Below, piece after piece: positions 18,801-64,000 of a DNA stretch of 64,000 bases. The stretch comes from Oculina patagonica (Eukaryota), in assembly GCF_052425735.1 (NCBI RefSeq), contig NC_135765.1, positions 33,852,001-33,916,000 on the forward strand, written 5' to 3'. Made by a program: the position numbers and the translations under genes. Under the pieces are notes generated by a model. It was not told the origin of the DNA and ran no database searches. It saw only the letters and a list, made by a program, of their open reading frames with translations. Within the stretch, counting starts at the first letter, position 1; every line of letters begins with the position of its first letter.

Positions 18801-19266
18801 CAATCACTTCCTTGCTGGAGGCTTTCTTTGAAAAACCAAGAAGCAACACCTTCCTCATTAGCTCTGTGTCACGGTTTATCAGGGTAAGCTTTTCTTTGGC
18901 TGGGGAATAAACTATTCTTCCGAGTTCCAGTCTGTGACCATCTTGAGGAGAACCATCGAACGTTTGATGATCACGTTTTTGTGTTTGATTCGTCAAACCA
19001 TCAAAATTATTTTTTTCTTTCGTGTTCCTCTCGAAAGAAACGCGATTCTCGGCTTTTATCACTGCTCTGTACAACAGCAAGTCATTTTCTTTGCAGCAGA
19101 GGAAATCCACTTTCGATCCACCCTGCAATTTCTCCAGCGAAGAAAACACCCCATCATGCCAGTTTTGAACAAGTTCTCGGATTCCTTCCCACGTTTTCCA
19201 TGAGGGTGCATATTGAGATGTTAAACTAAGACTTATAGACTTCACTGCACTTGACTCCTTGGCCAT
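15854..19266 (-). CDS. GHKL (HATPase_c-like) ATPase - coiled coil - C3HC4 RING fusion, copy A (3 exons, 794 aa)
   Basis: Exons 19266-17682, 17238-17063, 16477-15854; GT-AG and in phase. N-box EGIRELVQNWHD, G2 box IGQFGEGLK, then LFVKGVWV...GVDF..LKIDRDR. C-terminal CIIC-x11-CRH-x3-CYQC-x6-CSYCR. Confidence 0.85.
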
Positions 19267-40736: not shown

Positions 40737-43700
40737 ATGGCCAAGGAGTCAAGTGCAGTGAAATCTATTAGTCTTAGTTTAACATCTCAATATGCACCCT
40801 CATGGAAAACGTGGGAAGGAATCCGAGAACTTGTTCAAAACTGGCATGATGGGGTGTTTTCTTCGCTGGAGAAATTGCAGGGTGGATCGAAAGTGAATTT
40901 CCTCTGCTGCAAAGAAAATGACTTGCTGTTGTACAAAGCAGTGATAAAAGCCGAGAATCACGTTTCTTTCGAGAGGAACACGAAAGAAAATAATGATTTT
41001 GATGTTTTGCCGAATCAAACACAAAAACGTGATGATCAAACGTTCGATGGTTCTCCTCAAGATGGTCACAGACTGGAACTCGGAAGAATAGTTTATTCCC
41101 CAGCCAAAGAAAAGCTTACCCTGATAAACCATGACACAGAGCTAATGAGGAAGGTGTTGCTTCTTGGTTTTTCAAAGAAAGCCTCCAGCAAGGAAGTGAT
41201 TGGACAGTTTGGCGAAGGACTTAAAGTTGGCGCCCTAGCTTTAGTCAGGGAAGGTAGAGTGGTTTCCATGGAAACGAGCAAAGATCGCTGGAGGTTTGGA
41301 TTGTCACATGATGAGGCATTTGATGAGGAGGTGTTGACTGTGTTTGTCGATGACAGGTGGAAGGAAAGTGATGATGATGATGATGTTGATGATGATGACG
41401 ACGATGTTGCCAACCTTGGACAGACAGACACACGTGTATCTGTCTTTCCACTTTGTCATAAAGATTGGGAAATGTACTTGAAGCGGTTTCTTTTTCTTTG
41501 TCCGCCTTCTGACTATGTCAAGTCACAGGTGGGCACGTTGCTGTTAGGTCAACGTTATAAAGGTCAACTTTTTGTCAAAGGTGTTTGGGTGTCAGACTTG
41601 ACCAAGGATGGTCTAGCCTCCGGGGTTGACTTTGTTCATCTCAAGATTGACAGGGATCGAAGAGCTGTCGTTCATCTTAGTGACGTTGACCATCAGATCA
41701 GTAGCATGTGGGTTCACGCTATAGAGGAGAGACCTGATCTCATTCCATACTATTACAGACTCTTAGAAGAAAACAGCACCTCAGATGTGCGACATGCAAA
41801 TTTTTACCTCAGTGATAACTCTGCACTGCTTAAGCTTGTTGCTCAACATTTCTTCGCTATTCATGGATCGATGACATACCCAATACCAAACTGCATTTCA
41901 GCAGAGAAGCTAAGTAAAATCAAACAGGAAATTGATCAGAAGTTAGTTTTGTGTAATCAATCTTTAATCGACGTGTTGTACAGGTCTGGATTGGTTGCTC
42001 CTTTGGATACAATTCTCTCCAAAGCAACAACAAAACAATCAGTTATAGTTCCATATGCAGACTTGACTCAAGAAGAAATTGATATTCTTCAGCATGTTGA
42101 AAAGCTTGTCCAGTTGTGCTATCCAGAGTTTAGTATGGTATCCATGGATATTTCTGAATCTGCAGGACAGGTTGTTCTTCGAAAAGAGTTTGATCATTAC
42201 GAGATTCCACGAGCTTTGTTGAGTGGAAAGGCAGATCACTGTTGTGGACAAAATAACGGTACCAAGTGTTTCTGTAGAGAGGCTTTGATTGTGTCAATGA
42301 TACTATCCCTTCAATCTGAGCAGTTAGTACAAGGTTAGTTGATGCACTTCTTTCATTTTGCTTATAATCAAATCATGTACATTTCCTGCATTCTGAGAAT
42401 CATTTTAACCCTCACTGCATGATAAGGCAGACCTTTGTGGCCCGTGGGGGTGCAGACGCACCCATGATGCCCCCCATGTCTACGGCCCAGCTTGACAAAT
42501 AGACATGTGCGTGCAAAACCAATTAAAATTAAGACATTTGTTATATAATTGATGGTGGTTATGGACTCATTTTTTACAATAATCATCCCAACCCCACCAT
42601 TTCCAGGTAAATGTAGACATAACTTTTACCACAAGTTCAAAACTTTTTTTCAGCTTTTCATTATTTGAGGCCCTGCCAGGGGGGTTCCCGTGTCGCTTGT
42701 CTAAATTTAAATATGTGCTATGTCGCTGTTTTTTCGCTCTTCATGTCGCTGTCGGTAATTAAATTGAAGGAAAATTGCCTGTCCGTTTGTCGCAATTTTA
42801 TTAGTATGCTGTCGCTACTTTTTACCGAATGGTAATGAGGTTATGTTATTGGCCTCATTTTCTCACTCGAACACTCACTCACTCACTGGATTCTGATATC
42901 AAACCGCAATTAATTCATCATTAAACGAGAAACGTGCTGACAGAAAGGTCCTTTAAACGCATTCAGCACATGTCAATCAGAAACAAATTATTCTGACTTC
43001 AACCCCGTTCCAGGGTCTCTCTCTTTCAGGGAACTAAATTGAATTTCACAAAACAAATCGAAAGAGGATCACTTACACTTATCCTCTGGTGATAAAATAG
43101 AATAGAATTTGTTCAACGAAGCCTCAGAGCATAGGCTATCAATGACCCATTCACGTAAGAAAATATTCAAAGACGCGTTTTAGTGAACACAACATTCATG
43201 CACGTTTTTGTTTCGCGTCACATCATCTTCGTGTCACGTCATCCGTTCTTGATCTTTTTGAGTCGTGCAGAAACACGCATCTTTCTCTCAAATTTTATTC
43301 GCTGCTAAAAATAACGCTATACGTGCTGGCAGAAAAGTAAACATATTCACAAAACAAATTTACTTAATGCTAAAAAGGATCAAAGGTTACACTTAAATAT
43401 TTTTGTGATAAAATACGGAATTCGCGCTACGAAGCCTGAGAGCACGAACCATCAATGATGCAATTCCCATGGAAAAATAAAACATTCACAGAGAAATAAA
43501 GTGAGATTGTGTTACATTATTGAACGCTTATTTGAAGAAAAAAACTATCAATGACCCATCCACGCAAGAAAACATTCGAAGGCAAATTAAGTGAGATTGT
43601 GACATTACTGATAGCACCTATGAACTACATATAGTTACGCTTAAACTGTTATAAAAAATTATTACGCTCGCCTTGTGACGTGTTTTAGTCAACACAACAT

Positions 43701-45698
43701 CCACGGCACGTTCTTGTTTCACGTCACGTCACCTTGTGTCACGTCATCCGTTTTTCATCTTTTTGAGTCTAGCAGATACACGAAGTGCTCGGGCGTATCT
43801 TTTCTCTCAAATTTTTTCTGCTGCTCAAAAATAACGCTATACGTGCTGACAGAAAAGTAAACATATTCACGAAACAAATTTACTTAATGCTTCAAAGGAT
43901 TAAAGGTAATACACTAACCGGTAAATATTTTGGTTGTGAAAACTGAATAGCGCTACGATCCCTGCGAGCACGAGCCATCAATGACGCAACTCACGTGGAA
44001 AAATAAAGCAAAGTGAGATTGCTTTACTTTATTGGACACTTATTTAGAAAAAATGCGGAGGTCAGCACTTCATTCATCGAATTACCATGAGGTTGCTCAA
44101 AGAGCCTTTGATTGCGCCATGTGGCTTGTCGGAATTTACCCTCACGGCTGGCAGGGCCTCTTATTTTGTAATTCCTTTTTTTTTTGTTTTTTCCACAGTT
44201 GGTACAAGCTCACTTAGTGGCCACAGTGACAGCATAGTCAAGATAGTGGCATCATTATCAATGCAGGTTTGCCGAATGAACAAGCCATTTTGCAAAGACT
44301 TGCATGGGGAACTGCAATCATCGCAAAAACTCCCGAATCCATCAGTGCTCAAGCAGAGAGAGGAGATGTTACAAGTAAGTATCATGAAAAGCAATAAAAA
44401 AAAAATGAAATGTCACATCCGGTGAAACTTGTAAAGCAACAGTAATATTTTAGGTCTCCCATCCATTAAAGTGCCCCCCTCCCCCTCTGGGTGCCAGATC
44501 ATGACAATTAAGAACAAGAAAACATGGTATTTTTAATGCCTTTTAAGTTTCACATTTGCCAATTCACTTTTTATTGTTACCATCTTGAGTAACTGTAAAA
44601 CAGCAAATCCCACTTTATTTCTTTTATGTATCCTTACTGACACTTTTTTTTTTGTTGTTTCACTTTGATAAGTGACTGGTAATTAAAGCTCTCAATTCAA
44701 AAACAAATAAATAAATAAAAAAATATGTGTTTATAGTGGTCATGCACTTAGCTTCATATCTCAACGAGATAGCTAGTTTACAGGCATGCCACTGAAACAG
44801 AGGAAACAAATAATTTATAAATGAACATAACAAGGTTAAAAATCCCAACTGGCAGAAGGCAGACCAGTTGGTTATATACAAAGCGTGGTTGAGGATTTGA
44901 ACTCGGGACAACCGAGAAACAAATCCAGCTAGTGGCAAGGGCAGTTTAAACCACTCAGCCACGCTTGCCTCCCTAAAAGTATACAATGTAAACATTTGCA
45001 AAGTATTAAAGCCTATAAACAGTTTTCTGCGTAAACTGAAATCCACTACATGTACTACTTTAAATTTCTTTCAGAGAGAAAAAGATCTTCTGAGTGAAAA
45101 GCTCCTTGAAAAAGACAGGAGCCATGCACAAGAGCTCTTGAAACTTCAGTCCAAGATTTCTTCACTGGAAAAGGACTTGGCTAGTCAAGAAGTCAAGATT
45201 GTTAACATTGAGCAAGAAGTTGGCACAGCATGGAAGAAAAGGTTTGAAAGTGAAATGGCTAACCTTTCAAGCACAATCACTGATCTCAAAAGAGACAAGA
45301 TCTTCTACCAGGAAAGGCTAGCTGCAGTAGTAGAGGACCATAAGAACAAACAAAAAGCTCATTCTCGTCAAGTTGGCCTTTTAAACGACAGAAGTGAAAT
45401 TCTTCGGAAGCGGCTTGCTGGCAAGTTTGAGAAGCTGACTCAGATTGTTTTGGCATCAAATGAGAGAGAGGACTCTGCAGAGAACTCTGTTGCTGATGTT
45501 CTAAAATCAGCCACTAAAGAGATTGAAGAAATGTGGTTTCGAAAGGATAATTGCATAATTTGTACTATTGAAAAACCAAATTGTGTTGTAATTCCTTGTC
45601 GCCATCAAATAACTTGTTATCAGTGTACTTCCTTCTTGGTGAAGTGTTCCTACTGCAGAGGGCCTATAAAGGATATGATCGTCACCTATGGTTTATAA
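40737..45698 (+). CDS. GHKL ATPase - coiled coil - C3HC4 RING fusion, copy B (3 exons, 798 aa)
   Basis: Exons 40737-42333, 44199-44374, 45075-45698. Same motifs as copy A, with a poly-Asp loop 4 residues longer. Confidence 0.85.
42667..44160. mobile_element. MITE (GAGGCCCTGCCAG TIR) carrying a nested ~1.3-kb element, in intron 1 of ATPase-RING copy B
   Basis: gaggccctgccag ... ctggcagggcctc flanked by ttattt on both sides. Empty site in copy A at ~17265-17285. The nested part matches 20017-21341. Confidence 0.8.
44700..44972 (-). mobile_element. SINE-like element in intron 2 of ATPase-RING copy B
   Basis: tRNA-like head (gaggcaagcgtggctgagtggtt on the minus strand), B-box-like gagttcaaatcc and a (TTTA)n tail. 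Not present in copy A. Confidence 0.55.
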
Positions 45699-47315: not shown

Positions 47316-47777
47316 TTAAATCTTGATGCTTCGAGCAATCTTAGCAGCCTGTTGCGCTTTCATAACTGTGTCGTTTGCTCGGAATCTCTCGACAAGTTCT
47401 GTCCCCATAAAATAGCCCTCTTGCCTTGGCCGACCATGAGTTCCATCAGGGAAGGTAATCATGCCTTCGCCATCAACTCTTCCGTTTTGAAACCTTCCTT
47501 CAAAGCGCATTCCATCGCTCCGTGTAAAAGCCCCGAAGCCACTGTATTTTCCGTTTTCAAATTCACCCTCATACATAGAGCCGTCCGGAAATCTTGCAAC
47601 ACCATGGCCGTGGCAAAATCCGTTCTGAAATTGTCCAACATACTTCGTTCCATCGACAAGCGATAGATGTCCGATCCCTTGCTTCCTTCCATCATTATTC
47701 CATTCTCCATCGTACACGTCGCCGATGGGGTAAGTGAATTTGTGTCTTGCAACAGCTTGAGAGCTCGGGGAAGACAT
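47316..47777 (-). CDS. MORN4: MORN repeat-containing protein 4, copy B
   Basis: Protein identical to copy A; about 6 synonymous differences by hand count. ATG at 47777-47775. Confidence 0.92.
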   Translation of the reverse strand: MSSPSSQAVARHKFTYPIGDVYDGEWNNDGRKQGIGHLSLVDGTKYVGQFQNGFCHGHGVARFPDGSMYEGEFENGKYSGFGAFTRSDGMRFEGRFQNGRVDGEGMITFPDGTHGRPRQEGYFMGTELVERFRANDTVMKAQQAAKIARSIKI

Positions 47778-48362
47778 TTTCAGCGGGTTTTCAAAGAGTT
47801 TTCTCGGTTTTCGAAGAGTTGTTTCCACAGAGAGTGAAACAAGTTATGCAAACGCAGATGTTTTTCTCAAAAGGTTTCCTTTGGCGCCCTGGAGATCGAT
47901 CACAGCGGAAGCTTTGACAGTGAACTAGCTGCGAATAATCGCTCCCAAGGAAGTTGTACGTAAATCTAATCAAAACTCAAAACAATACAACGAATTTGCA
48001 TCTTCGCATCTCATAAAACAGAACAGTTATGTTCCAGGCGTTCCTGTAATTTCCCATAACTCTCAGCAAGAGCTCTTGAATCGGTCAGCGGTAACACGTT
48101 TTAGCGCTACTTTCCAAACGAAAAACCAAAGAAATTTCAAGATCTTTCAAAACAACAAAAAAAGTTGGCAACGACTTCCAAAATTTATACTTGTCATGCC
48201 TCCTGCTGGTTTTAGCAGGTTAGTTCTAGCTGAGTTGACAGGAGTTTTATTCAGTTGCAAAATAATAATAGTATTTCCCATCTCATCTAGTACATGGAAA
48301 TGTAGAGCTGTGGAAATCGAAAGGTCCGAAAGTTGAACGACGTTCGAGGAAGATCTCAAAAA

Positions 48363-51201
48363 ATGGGGTTGATTTGGAGCACCGAGCGAGGAAATATTCA
48401 CAACAGCTCACAGTTGAATGAAGAAAGAGGGGAGCTAACTCAAGACGATAGCGACTCTGACTGTGAGGAGATTTTCTTTGAAACTGTGGACAACGTGTCA
48501 TCAAATGGTGATTTGGTTCTTCAAGATTTTGACACTAAAAACAGCTGTGTAAAAGAGTCGTACGAAATTACATGTAATGCTACTTATGAAGAAAGCTCAA
48601 CAGTCTGTGAACCGGAGCAGAAAATTCCAGAGTCTGCTGTCCATGAAATAACCAGCAATATAAACAATTTTAATGCCGGGACATCAAGGGTATCTTTCAT
48701 AGCAACCGAAGAATGTAAAGAGAAAGATTTTAAAAGTGAAAAGTGGCTGACAAATTCCTCATGGAAAGTTCCCCCATTACTTAGAGAAGAAGATAAAGTT
48801 ATGGAATGCAGCACTTTTTCGCTGCCGCTGATCTCAGAGGAAAAAGTGTTTCGGGGAAAGCATGTTAAAAGTATCTCTGATCCACAAATGTTTGAATCAG
48901 TAAATTTCTCACGTCAGGCAAAACCTGAAATTCCTCGTTCATGTTCATGGCAAGTTGATGTAGACTGTTTTAAACCTAAAAAGAGGAAGAAACCACCAAA
49001 AAAGTATCTTAAAGACAAAGAGCATGACTTTCAGGATGATAACGATGACACTAAACATCGAACTGCAGCCTCAAATAAGCGAGATCTGCACATGGGAAGT
49101 TCTTTGGCTTCCATGGAAACTGTCACTCAGGAAATGATGGCCGGAAGGAAAGTCCTAGACCTCAGAAGATGGTAAATTAAGTACTTTGTAAACATCAGAT
49201 AGATCTGCTACTAATTTAAAATAGTGGCTTATTGCAGTTTTCAGTGATATGCAAACTCTGAAATTCAATCCTCAATAACGGTTTACGCTTTTTGCTGCCG
49301 TCAATCATCTTAGCTGACCTCTCAGGAAACAGAAGTTCACCTCAACTGGGTCAAAAGGTCACGTCTGTCAGTTGTGATTGGTAGATTCCTTTCTTTTTTG
49401 TTTTTTCCTGTTTTTCATGGTTCGTTGGCTGTCGCCATAATTATGATTGCGGGCAGTGAAAAATGCAATCATCAGTTGGATTTTGAATTTCAGAGTTCGC
49501 ATTTCACTGAAAACCGCAATAATGGGATGCATGGTGGCGTTATGGTTAGTGTGCTCTGTGTGTCTGGCCAGGATTTGAACCCAGACTGCTTGCTTGATCC
49601 AGAACCCAGGATTCTGGATCAAGCAGTCTGGATTCAAATCCTGACCAGGCACACTGTTTTGTGTATTTGGACAGGGTACTTTATTCTCACAGAGACTCTC
49701 TCCATCCAGAATAATTGCTGGTCAGCATAGTGATCAGGATACTAGCCTGACAAAATGTTGCCAGAGGCGACCTGTCATGGACTGGCATCCCATCCAGGGG
49801 AGGCTGGGGGAGAGGTAGAATAGAGACAAGTGGACAAATTGGATTAATGCTCATGTTCAAATCCACAACTAGGCAAAAACTGTGGGGTAAGGACAGGAAG
49901 GCAGGAACCTGGGAGTAAAGGAGGTGGGAAATCTTTAGGAGGGGAAGTGGGATTCCCAAGGCGGTGGGAACTGGGACAAGTTGGGAAGAATTTTGCAAAA
50001 GAAATAACACAAAGAGGCAGGAGCCACTAAGAAAAGGGGCGGGAACCAGGAGTAAAAGGCATGGGAGTGGGAAGTTCAGAACCTCCTGTCCTCCCTCCCC
50101 CCGCCCCTTCCCATAGAATGCTTGGCAAAGTCATTTCTATTCTTAAGCTTTTTTTTAACAGCCTATAATAAAGTGGCTTGATCAAGAGGCCAATGTGTAG
50201 ATGTTAGTACTTCTGCATCAGTTTGTTAATTGCTTTTGATAAATATTAAATTCTAGTAAACCAAGCTTATAACTACTTGAAAATACTTTGTCAGGTACTG
50301 TATGAGCCGACCTCAATACAAGCGTTCTTGTGGTATTTCCTCTCTGGTATCCTGTTGGAATTTCCTGTTTAGCTCACTTGGTGCAGGCAGGTACAGTGTA
50401 GTACAACACAGAAAAACACTTCCTCAAGTGTTGGATATATCTTTTCAATAGAAACTAACTCTTCAGAGATCAGATTTCCAAACCTCCATCACGGTTCTGA
50501 TTTTCTTTGTTTTAACTGGATGAATTTTTAATGAGTTTGAGATTCAACTTGCGTTCCAAGTTAGTTTCTTGATCAATAAATATTGTGGTACCTTATATTA
50601 CTGTTGATCAGACATGTAACATTAGTCATCATGTCATTCTCCACCCTTAAACCCCCCCCCCCCCAAAAAAAAAAAAAAAAAAAGAAGTCAGTTACTGAAC
50701 GAAGACTTTGTCTACTACGTCATGGTTTTCTGTCGTACATTACTGTGTTATTATAGTTTTAATGTTGCCATAGTTTTATACAAAAGAACGTAATAAAATA
50801 AATTATTGGTAGAATAAATTTAAATTATTATTAATGATTCCCCACAGTATCACACAAAATACCTGTACAATTTTTTCAATCATAAAAACTAAATTTGTAC
50901 CTAAAAATAAGTCAGTCCTTTTGTTTTATAGTAGGCAACCCCTGACTCAAGAGGAAGCATTAAGCATACTGGGTTTTAAACCGCCATTTGCAGAAATAAG
51001 GTTTGGACCATTCACTGGAAATGCCACTTTAATGAGGTAAGACAAAATCATTTTTATTTCCACAGGCATGCAATGCATGCAAAATGCTTTGTTGCTATTA
51101 ATACCAAATCTGATGTAATGTATATGAAATGATTCATATATGAACTGCGGATGTATATGAAAGTGATAAATGATCATCGCAGTGAAGCCTGAAAAAATTC
51201 A

Positions 51202-51235
<34 letters not shown>

Positions 51236-53991
51236 GATACCGGTGCGATGCTCTTCCAACTGAGCTATTGAAGCCACACATTGGGAGCGAGGTCAATTGT
51301 GAGTTCATATTTTCCCGTGAGAGAAGTGAAATGTTGTAATGTATATGAAATGATTCGTATATGAACTGCGGATGTATATGAAAGTGATAAATGATCATCG
51401 CAGTGAATTTCCAATTTAAGCAATTGGAAATAAAGAAGCCTGAAAAAAAATTCAGCGCTTCAACGGGATTCGAACCGGTGACCTCTGCGATACCGGTGCG
51501 ATGCTCTACCAACTGAGCTATTGAAGCCACACATTGGGAGCGAGGTCAATTGTGAGTTCATATTCTCCCATGAGAGGAGTGAAATGATGTAATGTATATG
51601 AAATGATTCATATATGAACTGCAGAAAAGAAAAAGGTCAGAAAAAGAAAAAGGTCAGAAAAACTATCTGTTGTGTAAGTAAAAATTTTGGAGCTGGTGAC
51701 TAAATTTGCTCGGAAGTCGCCAGCCTAGCGACTAAAATTGAGAAGAAGGATTGAAAGTGTGAGCTTAACTTGGCGACTAAAATTTTTCACTGGCGACCAA
51801 ACTTAGCAGTCGGTGGCCAAATGGCCACTAAGGAAAAAGTAAACTTGGAGGGTTGGTAAACAATTTTTCCAGTAATCAACATTAAGATTCTATTTTAGAT
51901 GGTTCAGGCAGCTCTGTGAGTATTTTGGAGTTCATGGCGAGGCATACTTTTTGTATAAACCCAAAGGAAAGAGTCGTACCATTGGCCTGAGTGGGGAGGA
52001 AGCTTTACGTCAGTTGAAGAAGGGTCTGCATAATCCTCAGATGGCTTTCATCTACCACTGCTACAATCACTACTTTTGTCCTATTGGTTACGACGACTCA
52101 CCTGTTAAGGCTGTTGATGCATACAGGTAGACAATAATTGTTCTGACTAATTGTTTAACCTAGTTTATTATATGTTAAAGGTTTTAAGTCTGTCACAAAT
52201 TTAAGGCTGATGGCTCATCAAATTGGCTCTATAGAGCAATTTTCAGGAGTGTTGAAAGTAATTCGCATTTAATAGTTTTGCATTGCTACATGTAGTGATT
52301 TTTTTTAAAAAACTTGCGCCACTTTCTCAACCAATCAAATGTTTTAACTTAAACCAAATTGTGACTCCCTCACACGTTTTTCTGTGCTTTGTGCTGGCTA
52401 CATGCACTATTGCTTTGAGTTTTCATTGGTTCACTGGATTATCTGTGCCCTTTGTAATTGGCCAGAGTAATTACTTTGGTTTTGGTTTTGCACTCTGGAA
52501 AACAGGCTGAAAAAAAAATTAAAACTGACTTGCAAAGATTACCCATTTATAAACAACTTTCCACTGAATAGCATCTTTGTTTGCAAACTGCTACCATGGC
52601 AACATTACAAAATACTGGGGTGTGGAGGAGGAGAAGGGTGGAACCTGCAGTACTTCTAGTGATGCCTCACTTGGTCCTTCTGTGTCAAAACACAAATTCT
52701 CATTGCTTATTTCCATGCATTTGTTCTATAGGATTACTTGGAGAATTTGTTAAACAATCAAAATACTTTTCCTTTAGTGATCATTCTGTCAATTCTCATA
52801 ACCTGAACTCTTTTTTATGTACTGATATTGTGAGGAGAAATTTGATGTTGGCACTCTTGGGGCTTAAAGTTCTGAGAAATATACATGCACAGTTGGCACA
52901 ACCTGTGACTTCAAACAAATCAGGGCCCCAAAGGAAAATGCTCCAGGCCAAAAATAAACCAGGCTTCAGGGCTCTGGACCACTTAAAAATGGGGCTCTAC
53001 ACTGTGGCAAACAGGCAAACATTTACTCTACCTTTATGTTCTGAATAATGTCACACACAGATGTTTGCTTTTTGTTGATAGGGTACAGCTATATGAAGAT
53101 GAGGTTGAAACTTGGATTTTAATTGGAGACCCAAGTTGTAAACATCCAAGCATTCACTGTAAAAGGTAAAAACCTATAGCAATTTCTACTTACCTTGTTA
53201 GTTTGACCTCTAGTTCATCCATCAAGAGACGCAGAGGCCTACTGGTTAGTGCTCTTAACTCCAGACTCTCACAGACTGCCTCACTTCACCCAGGTGTAAT
53301 GAATAAATGGGTGCCAGCGAACTAATGCTTGGAGGGTAATCCTGCGATGGACCACCATCCCATTTAGGGGGGGTACAATGTTGGGTATATGTTACAGATA
53401 CCAGGACTAGCGTTGGTGGTATGGGCCACTTGGCCTTGTGGTTTTAAGGAGCCGGTTATTATTTAGAGAGGGGGGAGGGCTGGTGCAAATCAAGGAAGGC
53501 TATGTTCAAATTCACCAGACCCTCCCCTTTTATGCAGCACATGTTTTGCTGACCCTCTCCCTCTTACCCACTCACCCCCTTGAACCTCCCAAATGTACAT
53601 GCACATATGACCCCCCCCCCCCTCCTTTTTTTTCCCTGCATAAAATCATTGACTCTCGCTGGGCTCCCCTATTTGCACCAGTCCTCCCCACCTTCTAGGT
53701 TTACTGCAATCAAACATTACCATCAATCTATTTTCTTTCAGATGGACAGACATTGAAACAGATTTAAACAACGAGGCCCCTTTGTACCTAAACATTCGTC
53801 AACTTCACATGGGAATTCAGCAGAAAAATGTTAAAAAGACTGGTGGAAATCTGCACTGTATCATGGCATTTCAAAAAAGCACCTGGCAGCGCTACAATAA
53901 AATTACACCAGCAGCATTGAGTAAAAGAATGCCGCAAGTAGAGGAAGATGAAATAGATGATCGTAATTCAAGTGACTCTAGTGATTCATGA
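48363..53991 (+). CDS. BIVM: BIVM copy B (6 exons, 523 aa)
   Basis: Exons 48363-49171, 50295-50390, 50932-51036, 51899-52126, 53082-53165, 53742-53991. Exon lengths are identical to copy A. Confidence 0.93.
51113..51623 (-). repeat. Tandem ~220-250-bp units, each containing a tRNA-like sequence (51203-51275, 51456-51528)
   Basis: Minus strand reads GGCTTCAATAGCTCAGTTGG(T/A)AGAGC...GGTTCGAATCCCGTTGAAGC(C), with A and B boxes. Two full units plus a partial third. Absent from BIVM-A intron 3. Confidence 0.8.
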
Positions 53992-55401: not shown

Positions 55402-58400
55402 TCAATTAATGAGATCAACATAACTTGCAGGCTCATTCTCTTCTGTAAAGACATCCTCTGCCGAGGGCCCTCTCTCTAGTTGGTGATAGTAGTTCTTGCT
55501 TGATGACCGAGTCACACTGTTGTCCCGTCTTCCGACCTCATTAATTGCTCCATCACTCAAAACTTTACAAAGCATCTTGTTCCTTCTTTCAAAGAATGAG
55601 CCATCAGTGATAGGCTCTGTATATCCCTCGCTGTCAGAATCTGAGGAATCACTTGATATGTTTGTCCTTGCATACCAGATCTTTCCAGACGACTGCTGTG
55701 AATTCATGTTTGATGGAGCTGAAACTAACACAAGTTAGATCAAAAGAACTCGATAAGTAATTTGTAGATCTATTACCATAAAGTCCATAAACACTCTACT
55801 AAGTCTCCTCTTCCTGGGGGTATTCATTTTCAGACCTTATAGGGGAAGGGGGGTCTTTTTGAAAGTTGGGAAATTTGAATTAAACCCCTGAAGGCAGACC
55901 AATCTGGGTGCTTATTAAGAGCAGTCTCAGTGTGTGTACCTAAGTCTGGTATTCTAGAACCTTCCTTGTGTCACCTTGTCCTAGTTAACATGCAAAAACT
56001 GGCAACTAATTTGTCAAACAATCTGTGAAGTGCAATTTAGCTTTCCATATTTTTTTTATGGGTGGAAAGAAGCACTATCAAATCAAGTGTCTTTCCCAAG
56101 TTACAATGACCCTAGCTTGCAGACTGGATTGAAACCTGTTGAACCAGAACACTAACCATTCAGCCACCATGGCTCACAAAATATGTACGAGAAAAATTAA
56201 GAAATGTTTTAATGACCTTCAGGAAATACTGTCTATCATCCCAATAAATTTTTGGTCTGACAATTTTCTACTGACTGTTGACTTACTTTTCCTCCCTGCA
56301 TTCTCCTTTGCTGAATTTGTTCGGAAAACAACCTGTTTTGCTGCAAATCAATTTAAAAAATATTCAATAGTCAGCTAATGTACCACTATTTTTCAGTCTT
56401 ATTATCATCTACAGTCACTGTGGTTGCAAATGGGATCCTGGTAGTTGTCTATAGGCTTAAATGTGACACTAAGGTACTGTAGAATTATTTTTGTTCCTTC
56501 TAAGTTGTAGTACTATGAGGGAGAATTTGTTCAGCTAGCAAAGCCATTTACAATTATCATTTTCAAAATTCTTGTGACTGGTCTGAGCAATGACACAATA
56601 CTGTATTGAGAAATTTTATTCTGATCATTCTAGGGGTGTCCAGCTCCTGTACACAGGCTAACCAACCCTACAAATGTACACAGCTTACCATGTTTTGGTA
56701 GAGGTGGTGGCGGTGAAGTGGGAGGCGGCCTCAGATCATTCAACGACAATGGCCTCCTAAGATTTGGGTCCACAAGTACATTCCCGTTAGCTTTCAGATG
56801 TTGATGTGGCAAGGGCTGAGGAGCTCGCATAGCTTTGGGATTTCTTGCATTTCCTTTGGATGACTTGTGTTCTGGTGAAGGCGTTAGATCAGCGTAATGG
56901 TATTTAGCACTGTCTTGCTTGACTGGTGCAGATACTGCGTACAAGTAAGGTTGGGGGGACTGTGCCAGTGCCGCTAACTGGGCAGATATCTCAGGATCAA
57001 TGTGAATATCTCTTGCAAGATCATTTACAATGCTTCTTGTTTGACCAGCACCTGAAAGTATAAAATATTAAGTAAATTATATGGAACTTATCAAACTTAG
57101 GTAAACAAAAGTAGAGTCTGCATTCAAGCCTAGTGGTCTATCAGGCTGGAGCTTATCCTTGTTTCAGTAGCACAAAGTGACTATAAGAATTTTAACTCCC
57201 CCCTGGATGGGATGTTAGCCCATTGGCCATGGGATGTTAGCCCAGTGGGTTCTCATCCCCACTCCCACAGCATTAAATTTACCAGTACCCATTTAAACCC
57301 CTGGGTGGAGAGAGGCACTGTGAGAGTAAAGTGTCTTGCCCAAGAACACAACACAATGACGACCCGTCAACCCATGTGTTGTTCGGCAAGACACTTAACT
57401 CTGCTTCACAGAGCCTCTCTTCACTGTGAGGGGCACAAGACCACTATTAATATAACTTATGCCATTTTTTATTAAATGAGACAACTTTTTAGCCAGGTTA
57501 ATTTCACTTGTCCAGAACATACCATGAAAAACCTTGCTTTCTGTGAGTTGAGTTGGTGTGTCTGTAACAAGATCGGCCAGTTTTTTGTATGCTCCAGCAA
57601 CCAGTAAAGTTTTGGAAGCCCACTGCTGAAGACCGTCAGAAATTCTGCCTAAGGAATCCCTCAGTTTACGTGCCTGTAAAAAAATGCTTTGTAATTCAAC
57701 GAGCATATAGCCACGTACATGTACTTATGCCTTACTTAATGTCAAATGTATGATGGTGATGATGATGATAAATATTTCCCTTAAGCTAGCTATAGGGAAG
57801 GCTGCATTTTAAAAGGTGTACCTGACTGTAGTTTCAACTAGGGAGCAAGAATATCATTACCTTAAAAATCTCATGCTTGGTTGTTTTCACCTCTAGCTCA
57901 GCCTGCTCCTGTTCAGCCTGGGAAATAACCTGTAGTATAGTATTAGAAAAAGGCAAAACACAAATTAGGTTAATTGTGGGCATGGCGGCCCAAGCTTAAT
58001 AGATCCCTAAAAGATACTATAGTGACTTTTTGCTGACTGTATCAATATAGACTGCTAGTTGACACAGTATGGCGGCGGCATTTTATTTCTTTATGTACCA
58101 CTCTAAGCAGTCTGTCCTAAACACAAGAGGACAAGAGGAGCAATCCTGTCCCTTTCATGTGGGACCCCCCCCCCCCTGGAAAGCTGGTGGATGATTCAAG
58201 GGATGTTGAACAGTTTTGCTGGCTATTAATAATAAGATTTATTAACCAGTACTGTAATTAATACATTACCTCAACCATTTCATTTGACATTGTCCTAGGT
58301 CTTCCTCCATCACAGTGACTTTTTCTCTTGTTCTGATCTAACTAAAGATGAAACAGTATAATTGGCAGCAATGAGAAACTGAAAACACAAAAATTATTAA

Positions 58401-60899
58401 TATAATTATTAACTGCAGGTACCTGCTTCTGAAGTCTGTTCATTTTTGCTGCATGCATGGCTTCCCTCTTTCGTGCGTCATCCAAGACACGCTCTTGTTG
58501 AAGTACCTCTTTAAAACTTTTCCGGTATTTATGATACTGCAATGCAAATGACAAGAAAACAATAATAAATCATGATTATTCCATAATTCCAAATAACTTT
58601 TCTTAAATATATAAACTACATGATACATATTGGCTGCAGTCACATCTAGACTACTAACTATAGTTAAGGCGGCGTTAACTATAGTTAGCTATTTCGGTAA
58701 TGTGACCGCTTCTCTGTTCACCCAAACTATAGTTAGAAAATTTACGCCTCGCTGATCCAAAACAATACAGACTAAATATAGTTATACCCAAGCAAGGTTT
58801 ATGGGTAAGTCTTAAGTTTGCAAACGAAAAACCAATCAGAATGTGACAGCTAGTTCTTTCCGCACGTGCAAAATGAACATTCATATGCAAAACAAAGCGT
58901 GAAGGGAAAGAAAAAAGAAAAACAACATGCCAAGAAATTACATATCACCAATGTTAGCAAAAATAAAGCTTGAATTCCTCGGCTTCTAGCATCCTTACTT
59001 AATTTTATTTTCTTCAATGCCAAGATGCCGTGCAAAAATAGAATAAATAGAGGAACATCAACTAGACACATATCAACAACAAGGGCTGTCATGAACTAGT
59101 TTAAATTCGAAATCATTCAAAAGCTAATCAGAACTAACTATAGTTAACTGCATTGGTGTGACCGCAAAGACGACCAAAAGCACTAACTATAGTTAGGTAT
59201 GATGTCACATAACTTGAGACTAACTATAGTTAAACTTTAGTTACGTCATAGATGTGACTGCAGCCATTATAGAGGGGGGAAATAAAATGGATACCAACCA
59301 CCTTTCATTACTGGGCTATTAACATTTGGTACTTCCCAGCCAAGCAGCAAGTACCAGCCTGATTTTTTGGATCATTATACAAGTCTATTTTGTGGAAAAG
59401 TATGAATCGTGTGACCAATGTAATCCTAAGTAATGCTATGGAAGCTTATCCTGGTTTCTGTAGCATTAATGGATTAGGAATATTTCTACTACCCCTGGAT
59501 GGGAGTAGAAATGAATCAATGAAGGATTACCGCCTGGCAGCATAATTTCGCCAATACAGATTTATACACCTGGGTGAAGAGAGGCACTATGAGAGTAAAG
59601 TGTCTTGCCCAAGAACACAACATGTGCAACAACCCTGGCTAAGGCTCAAACCTGGACCGCTTGATCCAGCACCCTACCCATAAGGCCACTGTGCCCCCGA
59701 CTAAGGAAAATGCTAAAATATAAACTATATGTAAGAGGTTATCACTCATTCGCTACAAATCTTTGTAGCGAAGGCAACGGCAAACCTTCTTCATTGTTAT
59801 ACGTGACCATATTAGCATTATACCAATGACTAAATGGCATAACGAACCTGACAAGCCACGAATTAAAATTAAAATGCATGTTACCTCAAAAAGAAACAAA
59901 AGTTATATTTAAGAAAAACATTTAAGTTACACGGAAATAATGATTATCCCTTATCACATAGTCAATTCATCCACTGGGAAAAAGCTGACAAAACCTCAGG
60001 CATCCTGTATCAATGACTGTTTAATATATATACTGTATAATTTATACTAGTTATGCAACGCTTTTGAGTTTTTTATGATTCTCTTTTTTTTTTTTTTTTC
60101 CGGGTTGGGGTTATAAAAAAAAAATATTTTTTTTTGTTTATGTTGATACGCAATACAGATGATAATCATGTTGTGTCTCCGATCAAGAGTTATTTTTCAC
60201 ACAATAGCCTGGTGAGGGGGGTATTCCCTTTATATGGGCTATATGCTATGTATGTTCCGCAGGATAGGCAGGGCTCACCAAAACCCCCATCCGGTCGTCC
60301 AGGGACAAGTAGATTTTCCTGTCGGGCAAGTGACTTTTCATGCTCACTTGCCAGATGGGCAAGGGCCCAGGCAAACCATCAATTAACTCGCTTAATTATT
60401 TCTAAATCAACGATTTTGAAACAAAGCAGTACATTTTTTGGCCTACTTGTCAAGGGTTATCAAAGGTTATAAATGAACTTTACAAAAACTAAAGGATGCT
60501 TATCATAAAAAAAAACACGCAGGCTACTTTGAACAAGGCTTCAGGACAGTGATAAATTCACCGTTTGCAAGCCTTTAATAAGACCTTCACTTTTGGGTCT
60601 TATTTTCAATAATATCAGCCACCCAAAACAAATAGGGTCACAATTTCCCTGGTTGTTCTTGCTATCATTCCAAGAAATATGGGCTTCAAACTTCCATGTT
60701 TTGCAGATGTTTAAAAATCACCCTATAATGTATTGCAAACCCCAAAAACTGTTGAACTGTACGTCATTTATCCATCATGGATTGTGTCTCTAGTAAGATT
60801 CTCCAACAAGTTCGTAACTTTGAAGCCAAAAATGCCAAACTGAAGGCCCAACCCAGTTTCTGATTTTCTTTGTTTTTGTTTTTTTTGTTTTTTTGTTTT

Positions 60900-60930
<31 letters not shown>

Positions 60931-60984
60931 GGTCATGAATTATTAATAAGCTTAAAAAGGAGAAAAGATAAGATAAGATAAGAG

Positions 60985-61016
<32 letters not shown>

Positions 61017-62826
61017 TATTTAAGTTACTTGACTATCTACCTATCTAACTAACTACAAAAATTTAATAACGACAAATTCAAATTTGAGAGTTACTTGCCC
61101 CATGGGCAAGCTGGAATTCAAGTTTTTGTCGAGCCCCGATAGGGTATGGTTTTTGAGGTTCTCAGTCCTTACATCCGCTTTTAGTGTTGCGTGCATAGCA
61201 ACTTTCTATCGACGTCCATCCTTTGACGTGTTAAACAAACAACATAGATCGAAATTCACCAATCAGTCAGCCCACTAGCATGACCTTCTGAATTTGTGGG
61301 CTCATCTGCATGAAACCAACACCGGTATGTATCCGTTTTGATTGGCTCATTTCAAAGAGCACATCGAAAGACGATGTCGATAGATGGATGTAGAAAGATA
61401 GCTATGCACGTAACACTGAAAGCGGGTGTCAAAGGGTATCATTTTGGTGACATTCTTTGAGCTCAGGATATGGACATTTCATGTTAATACCTCTTCAGTG
61501 AAATCTTTCATCAGATGTGTCCACATACTGGACACTTCAAACACCTTGCTGAACACATCCTGCAGAGCAAGATTCTCTTCACTCTTGGCCCATTTTAACA
61601 TTGCTATGGATGCTGTTGAAAAAAAATTATAAAAAAATGATTCTCCTTAAAATATCAACACATTTACACTACAGGTTTGTCATTAACACTGTCAATACAA
61701 TAAGTTTTCAAGAGCTTATTTCGATCAAAATACAAAAAGGTAGCTACGGAAGCTACGGAAGTTGTATCCTTTTGAAATTGTCACGAGTAAAGTTTGTATT
61801 GATCGTTTTGCAAAAAAACTCTTCGCTATAGATCAGATGCTCTCTCGCCACATTGTCCTTCAGGCTAAAGAAGAACTACTTTGACATGTATGCTGAAATG
61901 ATTTTGGCTATGATACATTCGACGGAAAATAAATTTGTACTGATATTTTATGTTCTGTGCAAAATGTGTTTTCGGGGTTGTCGTTTTTTATTTCTTTGTT
62001 TCTTTGGGAGCAAAGTGTCCGTGTGATCAGAGAATAATGATCTAATTTTAGATTTTCCCAAACAAATGCACCCTAAATATCTGTGAGGTCTAGGTCTATT
62101 TAAATTGTAGATTCTGTTTCATTGACCCCAGAAATATTAATCATAATGCATTATTCCTAGTGAATCAAATTTGAACCAAAAAAGGAGAATACTCTTTAAG
62201 ATGACAATATCAGGAGATGCACTCAAGTGTATTTTATGTAACAGCTATATAAAGAGAAATTCTGTATTGTAACACCACCACCACCCCCTCCCCTCCCCCT
62301 AAGAAACCTACATTTGAAGCAACCGGCCAAAAAAATCGTAGTCGAATGTGTTCGGACGGAAGGGTTTCGCAAGAAAAATCGGCTATGTTACTTCCAACTG
62401 ATCATGAATTCGAACAGAGATGGCAATGAGTTCACAACAATACAATAATACAACAATACAACGGCAGCAATATAAGTTTAAATTCATAACTTTTTTGTAC
62501 CCAAGTTAGTTCCCTACTGGGACAGTTTCTTGTTTTCAGTTCAAAGCATTGCTAGAGTTTCGGTTGCGGTATTTTTCGAAACAAAAGAAAGATCCTTTAA
62601 AAGAAAAAGCCTTTTTCTCTCGGATTTCATACAGTCAGTTATTGAACGTAAAGACTGTAGCTACATGTATCAATATAAAATTTTACCCACCGTCCGCTTT
62701 CGCAAGGACCACTTTTTGAAAATTCTCGTAGACAACCTTCTCGTCAAAGATGAGCAATCCAAGCGATCCGTGCCCATCTCTGGAATTTTTAACCTTGTGA
62801 GCAGCTCGACGGAATATTCTCGCCAT
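55402..62826 (-). CDS. Pil1/Lsp1 (eisosome)-like BAR-domain protein with a Tyr/Pro-rich tail (9 exons, 467 aa)
   Basis: Exons 62826-62691, 61612-61491, 58536-58423, 58341-58270, 57929-57861, 57673-57523, 57051-56689, 56340-56287, 55724-55402. All GT-AG and in phase, 1404 nt in total. The gene model is well supported. The Pil1/Lsp1 assignment comes from recalled motif similarity. Confidence 0.75.
58632..59265. mobile_element. MITE with GGCTGCAGTCACATCTA TIR and ATT flanks
   Basis: TIR at both ends and a 3-bp direct repeat att. About six copies of the palindrome (t)aactatagtta lie near the ends. Confidence 0.8.
60269..61138. mobile_element. hAT-like element (CAGGGCTC termini) nested in a poly-G MITE
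   Basis: cagggctcaccaaaac ... gtttttgtcgagccccg, with gatagg on both sides. Confidence 0.5.
61175..61425. mobile_element. Short foldback MITE
   Basis: ccgcttttagtgttgcgtgcatagc ... gctatgcacgtaacactgaaagcgg form imperfect inverted repeats. Confidence 0.6.
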
Positions 62827-64000
62827 TGATGCGTCTTGGATTTGCAGAGAAAATGGGGCAAATATTTAACAATATTTTCTTGCTTACTGTTCACTTACTT
62901 CTCGAGTTGTGCAGTGTTTGGCGGAAATGTCGGCGGAAATAGAGCCTGCGCACTAATTTATACCCAGTCTCCTTTGCTTAAAGGTCAAGTGCCCGGCCGG
63001 AAGTATAAATACAAGAGCCAAGGCAGGGCCGGAAGGGAGGGAACACGTGACGTATATTATTACTTTTTTCCTACCACAAACTGGACGCAATAAAACAACC
63101 ACAACTCGTAGAAAAGCAAATAACCGGCGACAAATGCACTTGGTTTATTCCGCATCATAGTGTATATAAAACATGAACAAGTTTTCAGGAATTTTACACA
63201 GATTGTTATTAAAGCAGTGATGCAACATTTTCGCAGACTGGTTAATTTAGGAATCATGCAGTAGGAAGGGGAATTCCCAAATTCTCCACCTCACTCCCCG
63301 TTTTAGCTCTGTAGTAATACAGAGAATCTTGAGTGCATATGGACCCTTCAGCCTCCCGTCTCGGGCTCCCTGAGGGCGTGTTTTTAATGCTGGCCACAAG
63401 CGCATTTTAATGGAAGTGGCGAATGAGGTAAACATTTTCGTTTTGAAAAGTACTACAATATCTAAAGTGATAATTGTCATCATAATCACATGATATATCT
63501 GCCTGCTTCCTGTAATAAAGAGCCCTAATATCATCATGATATCCTGTCTCACTTCACAGGTGAAACTGTAATATTATACTTTTTCCCCAAAATAACCTTC
63601 TGTAAATTTCAAGGGGCTTATCTGTAAAGAGTTTTGTGTATCAAGAGTTTTTGGGCTTAAATTAGAAAACACCACAGAAGGACCGGGCAGAAGGGGTGTT
63701 TCAATCTTATTTCTGGATCCCAAATTTTGCGCCAAACCAAGTGAGCGGAGGGCGATCATAACGCCTGGGAACTAGCAAGGCTGGCGTGTAAACAATACTG
63801 TCTAATGGTCGTTCTTGATTTGACATCATCTAAGGCATTTGATTCTTTAATTTCTCACCTAATAACACCTGAGCCTGTTCATGCCAAAGCAACCGGCCGC
63901 GATAAGTTATCGTCGGACTGTTGTCGAGACTATCTTCGTGACGTCTTCGGAGTCATTCGTTTGCTCGGCAGCAAACACACCGAAAACAATGTCTCTTCAG

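What the first reader, a model, noticed from the sequence alone, without database searches (positions are those of the whole stretch)
57020..62826. Animal gene encoding a Pil1/Lsp1 (eisosome)-type BAR domain
Seen: small exons missed by the ORF track splice to MARIFRRAAHKVKNSRDGHGSLGLLIFDEKVVYENFQKVVLAKADASIAMLKWAKSEENLALQDVFSKVFEVSSMWTHLMKDFTEEYHKYRKSFKEVLQQERVLDDARKREAMHAAKMNRLQKQ...HEIFKARKLRDSLGRISDGLQQWASKTLLVAGAYKKLADLVTDTPTQLTESKVFHGAGQTRSIVNDL. From memory, yeast Pil1/Lsp1 run L..L+K.EK.V...+..V...R..AA..L..WG....D+.D+..K...F....D.YR..LK.IR..E..V...R.RK ... KL+......FD.L.E.SEK.AL+AGYGK.LL.LLDDSP......Y.G....+QI+.D. This is colinear with the protein over the whole domain. Established: Pil1/Lsp1 polymerise on PI(4,5)P2 to form eisosome furrows and are generally regarded as fungal, with no recognised vertebrate ortholog. 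Inference: an intron-rich, hence native rather than contaminant, animal homolog. It could mean eisosome-like membrane furrows or tension reservoirs in cnidarian cells and an opisthokont-wide origin of the family.
Basis: partly seen in the sequence, partly recalled or inferred. Interest (0 to 1): 0.9.

Follow-up and report, generated by a model that had tools for sequence, protein, structure and literature searches.

The report
Coral gene with eisosome-type BAR domain
A nine-exon, expressed coral gene encodes a protein whose first 240 residues are a real but distant relative of the yeast eisosome proteins Pil1/Lsp1, a membrane-bending family that the literature treats as fungal, so animals (at least corals and sea anemones) also carry it.

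Summary
It lies on the minus strand from 62826 to 55402, with 9 GT-AG exons encoding 465 aa.

Spliced contigs in four public runs reproduce all six junctions inside the BAR region. The gene is single-copy here. Orthologues occur in stony corals and sea anemones, and all six BAR-region intron positions are conserved in Actinia.

Single exons give no Pfam hit. Full-length orthologues (88-89% identical to the window protein in the domain) hit only Pfam Pil1 (PF13805): up to 38.6 bits, cut-off 27, E=1e-9, profile positions 59-260 of 265.

- A profile of the coral family finds only Lsp1/Pil1 in the PDB (E=2.6e-6).
- A predicted model ranks Lsp1/Pil1 first in every structure library that holds them. 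They stand ahead of FAM92/CIBAR, BIN3, amphiphysin, endophilin and SNX.
- A BAR-style homodimer is predicted.
- Two of three PI(4,5)P2-pocket residues are invariant.

The fungal N-terminal lattice-contact segment is absent, so eisosome-like furrows remain untested. Databases already tag these proteins PF13805, but I found no paper describing them. Verdict: a new animal member of a known family.

The parts
62691..62826 (-). Exon 1 (coding part): start codon at 62826, residues 1-45 plus the first base of codon 46. It encodes the basic amphipathic N-terminal helix and the start of BAR helix 1. The 5'UTR extends at least to 62873.
   Evidence: Sequence and GT donor. Joint 62691|61612 in four runs, with contigs reaching 62873. 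Hydrophobic moment about 0.85 and net charge +4/+5.
61491..61612 (-). Exon 2, residues 46-86 (BAR helix 1 into helix 2; contains the invariant Trp53 aligned to Lsp1 Trp89)
   Evidence: joints on both sides in four runs; HMM alignment
58423..58536 (-). Exon 3, residues 87-124 (BAR helix 2; carries Arg91 and Lys95, aligned to the PI(4,5)P2-pocket residues Arg126 and Lys130 of Pil1/Lsp1)
58270..58341 (-).
   Evidence: AG/GT borders. Joints 58423|58341 in four runs and 58270|57929 in three runs. Present in all orthologues aligned except the broken Pocillopora partial model P0016. Leaving it out lowers the family-HMM score from 460 to 400 bits.
57861..57929 (-). Exon 4, residues 149-171 (start of BAR helix 3)
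   Evidence: Orthologue models that contain this segment score 8-11 bits higher on Pfam Pil1 than the Stylophora model that lacks it.
57523..57673 (-). Exon 5, residues 172-221 (BAR helix 3, dimer interface, invariant D-T-P-T-Q motif aligned to the Pil1 D-S230-P motif)
56689..57051 (-). Exon 6, residues 222-342. It holds the last two short helices of the Pil1-type domain (to about residue 240), then the disordered tail with the conserved YLYAV motif and a proline-rich PPPxSPPPPLPK motif.
   Evidence: Joint 57523|57051 in contigs of all four runs (table 5 for X2 and X4; table 8, records 1 and 17, for X1 and X6). The donor at 56689 is inferred from GT and from the orthologue alignment.
56287..56340 (-). 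Exon 7, 18 codons of the tail
   Evidence: AG/GT borders and orthologue alignment. Not covered by the read lay-out.
55402..55718 (-). Exon 8, the last coding exon including the TGA stop: Ser/Asp-rich acidic cluster, GYTEP motif and a conserved C-terminal Y-V-D-L-I-N end
   Evidence: ORF and acceptor; match to P0015 residues 358-465 in the own-genome search

Best explanation
This is a native, expressed, single-copy coral gene for a 465-residue protein. Residues about 1-240 form a genuine but distant (about 20% identity) member of the Pil1/Lsp1 BAR-domain family (Pfam PF13805). Shown here: the gene structure and its splicing, conservation across stony corals and sea anemones, and the family assignment by sequence profile in both directions and by predicted fold. 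Inferred: the domain forms an antiparallel banana-shaped homodimer. The dimer binds acidic, PI(4,5)P2-containing membrane through a short basic amphipathic N-terminal helix and a partly conserved lipid pocket (Arg91, Lys95, Lys30), so it senses or imposes curvature at the cell cortex. The 225-residue disordered tail would recruit partners through an invariant proline-rich motif of the kind SH3 domains bind, and it carries likely regulatory phosphorylation sites (a conserved Thr-Pro at the position of Pil1 Ser230-Pro, and Ser/Asp clusters). It lacks the fungal N-terminal segment that makes the eisosome lattice contacts. It therefore probably acts as an N-BAR-like adaptor or scaffold rather than as a proven eisosome.
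For: Gene model and canonical splice sites. Spliced contigs in four runs reproduce all six BAR-region junctions. Single locus in the genome.

Orthologues occur in Stylophora, Pocillopora, Orbicella, Porites, Acropora, Nematostella, Actinia and Exaiptasia. The window protein is 83% identical to the Orbicella protein overall and 88-89% identical in the domain to P0015/P0018. The six BAR-region intron positions are conserved in Actinia.

Pfam: Pil1 is the only family below E=1e-3 in ten orthologues, and 7 of 10 reach or exceed the 27-bit cut-off. The best is 38.6 bits, E=1.1e-9, spanning profile positions 59-260 of 265. In reverse, the anthozoan profile finds Lsp1 (3plt, E=2.6e-6; 8qb8) and Pil1 (8qbf, 8qb7) as its only PDB hits below E=0.02.

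Fold: AF2 model with pLDDT 74. The six best Foldseek-PDB hits are all Lsp1/Pil1 (E=9e-7 to 2e-5), and the next family stands at 7e-3. VIA-align gives Z=15.0 for Lsp1 and 14.7 for Pil1, against 12.8 for FAM92A and no more than 12.1 for the rest. The Swiss-Prot models LSP1, pil1, PIL1, pil2 and Meu14 fill ranks 1-5.

Homodimer: ipSAE 0.81 against a best control of 0.18. The three runs agree in at least 91% of contacts and pLDDT is at least 82. The mark was reached by 21 of 30 solved homodimers and 0 of 23 monomers in calibration. The interface involves helix 1 and helix 3.

Lipid pocket: Pil1 R126, K130 and K66 align to invariant or near-invariant R91, K95 and K30 (residue roles from PMC11324527). 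The N-terminal helix has a hydrophobic moment of about 0.85 and net charge +4/+5.
Against: The family score is modest: 24-39 bits, and three orthologues fall just under the Pfam cut-off.

The window's own spliced protein could not be submitted to Pfam or the PDB directly because it has no reference. Its assignment rests on 88-89% identity to the tested orthologues and a 460-bit match to their profile.

Single exons and a six-frame PF13805 scan of the genome give nothing.

Pil1 R133 and R70 are replaced by invariant Leu98 and Glu34. The first 58 positions of the Pil1 profile, which include the fungal lattice-contact N-terminus, have no counterpart.

All BAR families score Z=10-13 against the model, so the fold alone would not discriminate. 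The dimer pass may reflect the model's memory of solved BAR dimers.

No membrane binding, localisation or partner has been measured.
Confidence: 0.82

Rival explanations
1. The domain is a BAR domain of an independent, animal-specific family. Its resemblance to Pil1/Lsp1 is only the generic similarity of long amphipathic three-helix BAR modules and coiled coils, not specific common descent.
For: Identity to Lsp1/Pil1 is only 16-21%. Pfam scores sit near the cut-off. Other BAR families reach Z=10-13. The closest look-alike in the ESM Atlas is an unnamed arthropod cluster without a Pfam family, ahead of the Pil1 clusters.
Against: Two independent profile searches in opposite directions select only Pil1/Lsp1 and no other BAR or coiled-coil family. 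The alignment is colinear over about 200 residues and includes the Pil1-specific C-terminal short helices (205-218 aligned residues against 192 or fewer for other BARs). Shared landmarks include W53/W89, Y90-R91/Y125-R126, K95/K130, the D-[ST]-P motif and G..SR.I. Foldseek E-values are about 1000 times better than for the next family.
Confidence: 0.1
2. The gene is a true Pil1 homologue that an ancestor of Hexacorallia acquired by horizontal transfer from a fungus (or another eukaryote). It later gained introns and a new tail, rather than being inherited from the opisthokont ancestor.
For: The sequence searches here found the family only in Scleractinia and Actiniaria. The literature reports Pil1/Lsp1 hits restricted to fungi (PMC3128537).
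Against: Divergence from fungal proteins is very deep (about 20% identity). There are eight introns, six of them in the domain and shared between coral and sea anemone. The N-terminus and tail differ from the fungal ones. Structure and language-model searches point to an arthropod cluster, and AFDB entries that I believe (from memory of the accession ranges only; organism names were masked) are from a mite, a nematode and an ostracod rank at or above fungal ones. My sequence searches were limited by a word index and cannot show absence elsewhere.
Confidence: 0.12
3. The locus is contamination, a mis-assembly or a pseudogene, and the spliced protein is an artefact of picking ORF pieces.
For: None beyond the fact that no single exon is recognisable on its own.
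Against: There are nine canonical splice sites and an intact 1398-nt reading frame. Identical junctions appear in contigs of four runs from four studies. The gene lies inside a contig of more than 33 Mb among ordinary animal genes. Orthologues in eight anthozoan genera have the same length and structure.
Confidence: 0.01

Closest known systems
Pil1 / Lsp1 of Saccharomyces cerevisiae (Pfam PF13805; PDB 3PLT, 8QB7, 8QB8), the core scaffold of eisosomes; also S. pombe Pil1, Pil2 and Meu14
   Same: The three-helix BAR domain plus two short C-terminal helices is colinear over about 200 residues. An antiparallel homodimer is predicted. An amphipathic helix lies directly before helix 1. Pocket residues R126, K130 and K66 are conserved as R91, K95 and K30, and the S230-P site is conserved as T-P. 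A disordered C-terminal tail follows the domain.
   Different: Identity is only about 20%. The folded fungal N-terminus (about 35 residues), which makes the lattice contacts between dimers (PMC11324527), has no counterpart. R133 becomes Leu and R70 becomes Glu. The tail is much longer (225 aa) and holds an invariant proline-rich motif of the SH3-ligand type, Ser/Asp clusters and a conserved C-terminal motif not seen in yeast Pil1. The gene has eight introns. Lattice or furrow formation is untested.
Animal N-BAR and classical BAR proteins: FAM92/CIBAR, BIN3, amphiphysin/BIN1, endophilin, arfaptin, SNX-BAR
   Same: Same overall BAR fold (Z=10.5-12.8). N-terminal amphipathic helix as in N-BAR proteins. 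A domain-plus-tail adaptor layout is common among them.
   Different: No significant Pfam match to BAR (PF03114), FAM92 (PF06730), Arfaptin or FCH in any orthologue. None appears in the profile search of PDB sequences. Foldseek E-values are 50 to 1000 times weaker than for the Pil1 family. Identity is 6-13% and aligned lengths are shorter.
Unnamed arthropod protein cluster in the ESM Atlas (representative 302 aa, 176 members, no common Pfam family)
   Same: It is the best look-alike of both the Orbicella and the Nematostella domains by language-model features (0.90 and 0.92) and by predicted structure (TM 0.90 with the Atlas model, 0.67 with my model).
   Different: No sequence could be fetched, so homology was not tested. 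These scores are leads only. The cluster carries no Pil1 annotation.

Membership tests
Pil1/Lsp1 family (Pfam PF13805) | Match to the curated Pil1 profile at or above its gathering score (27 bits), spanning the domain | tested here: met
   Orthologue scores (bits): P0018 38.6, P0015 35.6, P0019 31.8, P0022 30.4, P0031 28.5, P0021 28.1, P0008 27.0. Three fall just below: P0032 25.9, P0025 24.9, P0010 23.6. All cover profile positions 59-260 of 265. The window protein itself was tested only indirectly: 88-89% identity in the domain and 460 bits against the orthologue profile.
Pil1/Lsp1 family (Pfam PF13805) | Reciprocal search: a profile of the candidate family retrieves Pil1/Lsp1 and no other family | tested here: met
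   hmmsearch of alignment A1 against PDB sequences gives 3plt 2.6e-6, 8qb8 9.1e-6, 8qbf 5e-3 and 8qb7 1e-2. The next hit is an unrelated Cas12a at 0.029, and no other BAR protein is listed.
Pil1/Lsp1 family (Pfam PF13805) | BAR fold closest to the solved Lsp1/Pil1 structures, including the extra C-terminal helices | tested here: met
   Foldseek-PDB ranks 1-6. VIA-align Z=14.2-15.0 over 205-218 residues, against 12.8 or less for other BARs. Swiss-Prot ranks 1-5 are all five Pil1-family entries. This rests on a predicted model with mean pLDDT 74.
Pil1/Lsp1 family (Pfam PF13805) | Antiparallel BAR homodimer | tested here: met
   Prediction only: ipSAE 0.81, best control 0.18, runs agree in at least 91% of contacts, pLDDT at least 82. 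The symmetric interface uses residues 17-69 and 164-213. The pass may come from the model's memory of solved BAR dimers.
Pil1/Lsp1 family (Pfam PF13805) | Basic lipid-binding pocket: R126, K130, R133 for PI(4,5)P2 and K66, R70 for PS (PMC11324527) | tested here: inconclusive
   By the HMM alignment: R126 aligns to R91 and K130 to K95 (both invariant), K66 to K30 (at least 90% conserved). R133 aligns to an invariant Leu98 and R70 to a near-invariant Glu34. That is three of five retained.
Pil1/Lsp1 family (Pfam PF13805) | N-terminal amphipathic helix inserted in the membrane (Pil1 residues 39-48) | tested here: met
   Predicted helix at residues 2-13. It aligns structurally to Pil1 from residue 36. 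Hydrophobic moment 0.8-0.9 and net charge +4/+5. This is a prediction; insertion was not measured.
Pil1/Lsp1 family (Pfam PF13805) | Folded N-terminus that makes the lattice contacts between neighbouring dimers in eisosomes | tested here: not met
   The protein begins at the amphipathic helix. Profile positions 1-58 of PF13805 are unmatched in all orthologues. This bears on 'forms an eisosome lattice', not on domain homology.
Pil1/Lsp1 family (Pfam PF13805) | Self-assembly into helical lattices or furrows on PI(4,5)P2 membranes; liposome tubulation | not testable with these tools
   Needs recombinant protein, liposomes and EM.
Classical BAR / N-BAR (PF03114), FAM92/CIBAR (PF06730), Arfaptin (PF06456), F-BAR (PF00611) | Significant match to the family profile | tested here: not met
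   No hit at E<=0.1 in ten orthologues. The only trace is FCH at E=0.16 in one of them. Structural matches are weaker than to Pil1/Lsp1.

The most novel reading that the evidence does not exclude
Pil1-type BAR scaffolds are an ancestral opisthokont invention retained in several animal lineages (hexacorals, and possibly arthropods and nematodes) and lost in vertebrates. In cnidarian cells they would assemble PI(4,5)P2-dependent, stretch-sensitive cortical membrane domains analogous to fungal eisosomes, using a different lattice contact and an SH3-recruiting tail.
Probability: 0.15. Interest if true: 0.85.

Novelty: new member of a known kind. Interest (0 to 1): 0.55.

Why it matters
Eisosomes and their Pil1/Lsp1 scaffold are described as fungal structures (some papers add algae). 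An early survey found significant hits restricted to fungi (PMC3128537). Caveolae are usually presented as the animal counterpart. I found no paper describing an animal Pil1 homologue.

A conserved, expressed Pil1-family gene in corals and sea anemones shows that the domain is not confined to fungi. Nematostella and Exaiptasia are tractable models in which to ask whether animals build eisosome-like, tension-buffering membrane domains. It also gives a handle on how the family evolved: vertical descent with loss, or horizontal transfer.

The finding is tempered in two ways. Automatic annotation already tags these proteins PF13805. Nothing is yet known of their function.

Tried and rejected
- Pfam on each exon separately gave no hits. 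A six-frame scan of the whole genome with PF13805 gave none either. Exons of 23-50 codons carry too little signal, so this is no evidence against the assignment.
Close orthologues fetched with exon 5 were used instead.
- Two word-indexed profile searches meant to reach fungal, arthropod or other animal relatives returned only hexacorallian proteins and exon-sized fragments. Absence elsewhere cannot be concluded.
- No fungal Pil1 sequences could be obtained, so no tree and no local profile-profile comparison were made.
- The Nematostella protein is not on record by exact look-up. Actinia was used instead.
- Lee et al. 2015 on eisosome evolution is not held in the library.
- The model without exon 3b was considered because exon 5 began at residue 147 in the first two homologues. 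It was rejected: those two gene models lack exon 4, not exon 3b.
- Contamination and pseudogene readings were rejected.


Full report
**What is there.** On the minus strand of the window, ORF pieces with canonical AG/GT borders join into one open frame. The nine exons are 62691-62826 (ATG at 62826), 61491-61612, 58423-58536, 58270-58341, 57861-57929, 57523-57673, 56689-57051, 56287-56340 and 55402-55718 (TGA stop). The CDS is 1398 nt and the product 465 aa.

Its '...' conceals a 72-nt exon (58270-58341). It also conceals most of exon 57861-57929.

**Expression.** Fourteen runs hold about 15% of the words of the locus, which is the share taken by the exons. Contigs of four of these runs were laid on 56880-62879. 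They skip exactly the predicted introns: 62691|61612, 61491|58536, 58423|58341 and 57861|57673 in all four runs. The joint 58270|57929 appears in three runs. The joint 57523|57051 appears in contigs of all four. One 1431-nt contig (X2) shows no mismatch in its listed pieces from exon 6 to the 5'UTR and runs on 519 nt past the lower end of the stretch. That length fits the remaining exons.

**Relatives.** Exon 5 alone fished out full-length homologues. Searches with those returned proteins from Stylophora, Pocillopora, Orbicella, Porites, several Acropora species (with paralogues), Nematostella, Actinia and Exaiptasia. All are named 'uncharacterized' or 'hypothetical', and most carry a precomputed PF13805 tag.

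- The window protein has the same length as the Orbicella protein. It is 83% identical to it overall and 88-89% identical to P0015/P0018 in residues 1-240, so the window is from a stony coral.
- Exons 3b and 4 are represented in most orthologues. The Stylophora model and one Acropora isoform lack the exon-4 segment.
- In this genome the gene is single-copy.
- In the Actinia tenebrosa locus (L005) the six intron positions within the domain coincide with those here. The tail is split differently and the neighbouring genes differ.
- The gene is therefore native and old within Hexacorallia.

**Is it Pil1-type?** Single exons and a six-frame genome scan give nothing. Full-length orthologues have one and only one significant Pfam family, Pil1 (PF13805). 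Scores run from 23.6 to 38.6 bits against a cut-off of 27, with a best E-value of 1.1e-9. The match is a single stretch covering profile positions 59-260 of 265. Models that include the exon-4 segment score 8-11 bits higher than the one that lacks it, which speaks for true homology along helix 3.

In the reverse direction, a profile of eleven anthozoan domains (A1) searched against all PDB sequences finds Lsp1 (3plt, E=2.6e-6; 8qb8) and Pil1 (8qbf, 8qb7). Nothing else falls below E=0.02, and no other BAR protein is listed.

An AlphaFold model of the Orbicella domain (pLDDT 74) has helices 18-56, 60-131 and 138-203, two short C-terminal helices and an N-terminal helix 2-13. Its structure-search results:

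| Search | Pil1/Lsp1 family | Next best |
|---|---|---|
| Foldseek, PDB | ranks 1-6, E=9e-7 to 2e-5 | 7e-3 (I-BAR) |
| VIA-align | Z=15.0, 14.7, 14.3, 14.2 over 205-218 residues | FAM92A 12.8; Bin1, arfaptin, amphiphysin, endophilin, SNX 12.1 or less over at most 192 residues |
| AFDB Swiss-Prot | LSP1, pil1, PIL1, pil2, Meu14 at ranks 1-5 | BIN3 3.8e-4; CIBAR 3e-3 |

**Anatomy and likely mechanism.** The HMM alignment to Lsp1 can be combined with the published lipid pocket of Pil1 (PMC11324527). In that structure the PI(4,5)P2 head-group sits on R126, K130 and R133, and PS on R43, K66 and R70. In the coral family R126, K130 and K66 correspond to invariant or near-invariant R91, K95 and K30, while R133 and R70 correspond to Leu98 and Glu34.

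Other shared landmarks are W53/W89, Y87/Y122, Y90/Y125, the D-[S/T]-P motif (Pil1 Ser230, which from my own knowledge is a Pkh-kinase site) and G...SR.I near the end of the domain.

Residues 1-13 form a strongly amphipathic, basic helix (hydrophobic moment about 0.85, charge +4/+5). It superposes on Pil1 from residue 36, the region of its membrane-inserted helix.

A homodimer is predicted with ipSAE 0.81 against a best control of 0.18. The runs agree in at least 91% of contacts and pLDDT is at least 82. In calibration the mark was reached by 21 of 30 solved homodimers and 0 of 23 monomers. The interface is symmetric, through helix 1 and the second half of helix 3, as in BAR dimers. This pass may reflect the model's memory of solved BAR dimers.

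My reading is a membrane-binding, curvature-sensing or curvature-generating dimer at PI(4,5)P2-rich membrane. The 225-residue tail carries an invariant LRPPP.SPPPPLP stretch, Ser/Asp clusters, a GYTEP motif and a conserved C-terminal motif, and would recruit partners. These functional steps are inferred, not shown.

**Differences from eisosome proteins.** The folded N-terminus of Pil1 makes the contacts between neighbouring dimers in the eisosome lattice (PMC11324527). It has no counterpart here: the first 58 positions of the Pfam profile are unmatched and the coral protein starts at the amphipathic helix. Two pocket residues are changed. The tail is animal-specific. Whether these proteins form lattices or furrows is open.

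**How wide is the family?** By sequence I can place it only in Scleractinia and Actiniaria, and the searches available were limited by a word index. Language-model and structure searches of the ESM Atlas put an unnamed, mostly arthropod cluster first for both the Orbicella and the Nematostella domains. Its representative is 302 aa, it has 176 members and it has no common Pfam family. The Pil1 clusters follow.

The best AFDB fold cluster is A0A1V9X583. Other non-fungal-looking entries (A0A1I7VZ62, A0A7R8WGC1) rank among entries named as fungal Pil1. Organism names were masked. From memory of the accession ranges I believe these are a mite, a filarial nematode and an ostracod, but I did not verify this. 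It is a lead for an animal-wide family, not a result.

**Novelty.** An early survey reported significant hits to eisosome proteins restricted to fungi, with Pil1/Lsp1 confined to Dikarya (PMC3128537). Later papers speak of fungi and algae. Full-text searches for Pil1 together with metazoa or Nematostella, and for PF13805, found no description of an animal member. Automatic annotation already marks the anthozoan proteins as PF13805. I therefore class this as a new, so far undescribed, animal member of a known family. It is of moderate interest. Interest would be high only if eisosome-like assemblies are demonstrated.

Noticed in passing
window 57190-57480 and 59460-59680 (introns of the gene); also 51134-51530: These are copies of an interspersed repeat. 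They have very high depth in the RNA-type contigs, joints such as 57223->59560 between the two copies, and loose ends reading like a tRNA-derived SINE (GGCTCGAACCCGGACC). At 51134-51530 two tandem ORFs share the peptide [27 protein letters not shown].
   Followed up: no
window 15854-16414 (-) and 45138-45698 (+): Two 186-aa ORFs give an identical Pfam result: RING finger zf-C3HC4_3, 39.7 bits, residues 136-180. This looks like an inverted duplication about 29 kb apart. The large ORFs next to them (17677-19266 -, 40689-42338 +) have no Pfam hit.
   Followed up: partly
window 47316-47828 (-): An ORF with MORN repeats (PF02493, E=5e-20). This is the next gene downstream of the Pil1-like gene on the same strand.
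   Followed up: no
window 30103-30780 (+): An ORF with a PAN/Apple domain (PF00024, E=1e-5).
   Followed up: no
P0008 (Stylophora) and P0010 (Acropora palmata isoform X2) versus window exon 57861-57929: These two public gene models lack the 23-residue exon-4 segment that all other orthologues have and that the window's transcripts include. This is either an annotation error or alternative splicing that would shorten BAR helix 3.
   Followed up: partly
Acropora paralogues P0010 and P0022-P0030: Acropora species carry several paralogues. P0010 (A. palmata) ends in repeated acidic ES..Y/C-V/F-D-F/L-I-N/D motifs, whereas this genome has one copy of the gene and one such motif.
   Followed up: no
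ESM Atlas and AFDB (no locus): The closest look-alike of the anthozoan domain, ahead of fungal Pil1 clusters, is an unnamed and mostly arthropod cluster (302 aa, 176 members, no Pfam). It is possibly the same family in arthropods.
   Followed up: partly
L005 (Actinia tenebrosa) 1-27279: The neighbours of the sea-anemone orthologue are an EF-G-like GTPase, ZPR1 and a porin/VDAC gene. They are not those seen around the coral gene, so there is no local synteny.
   Followed up: no
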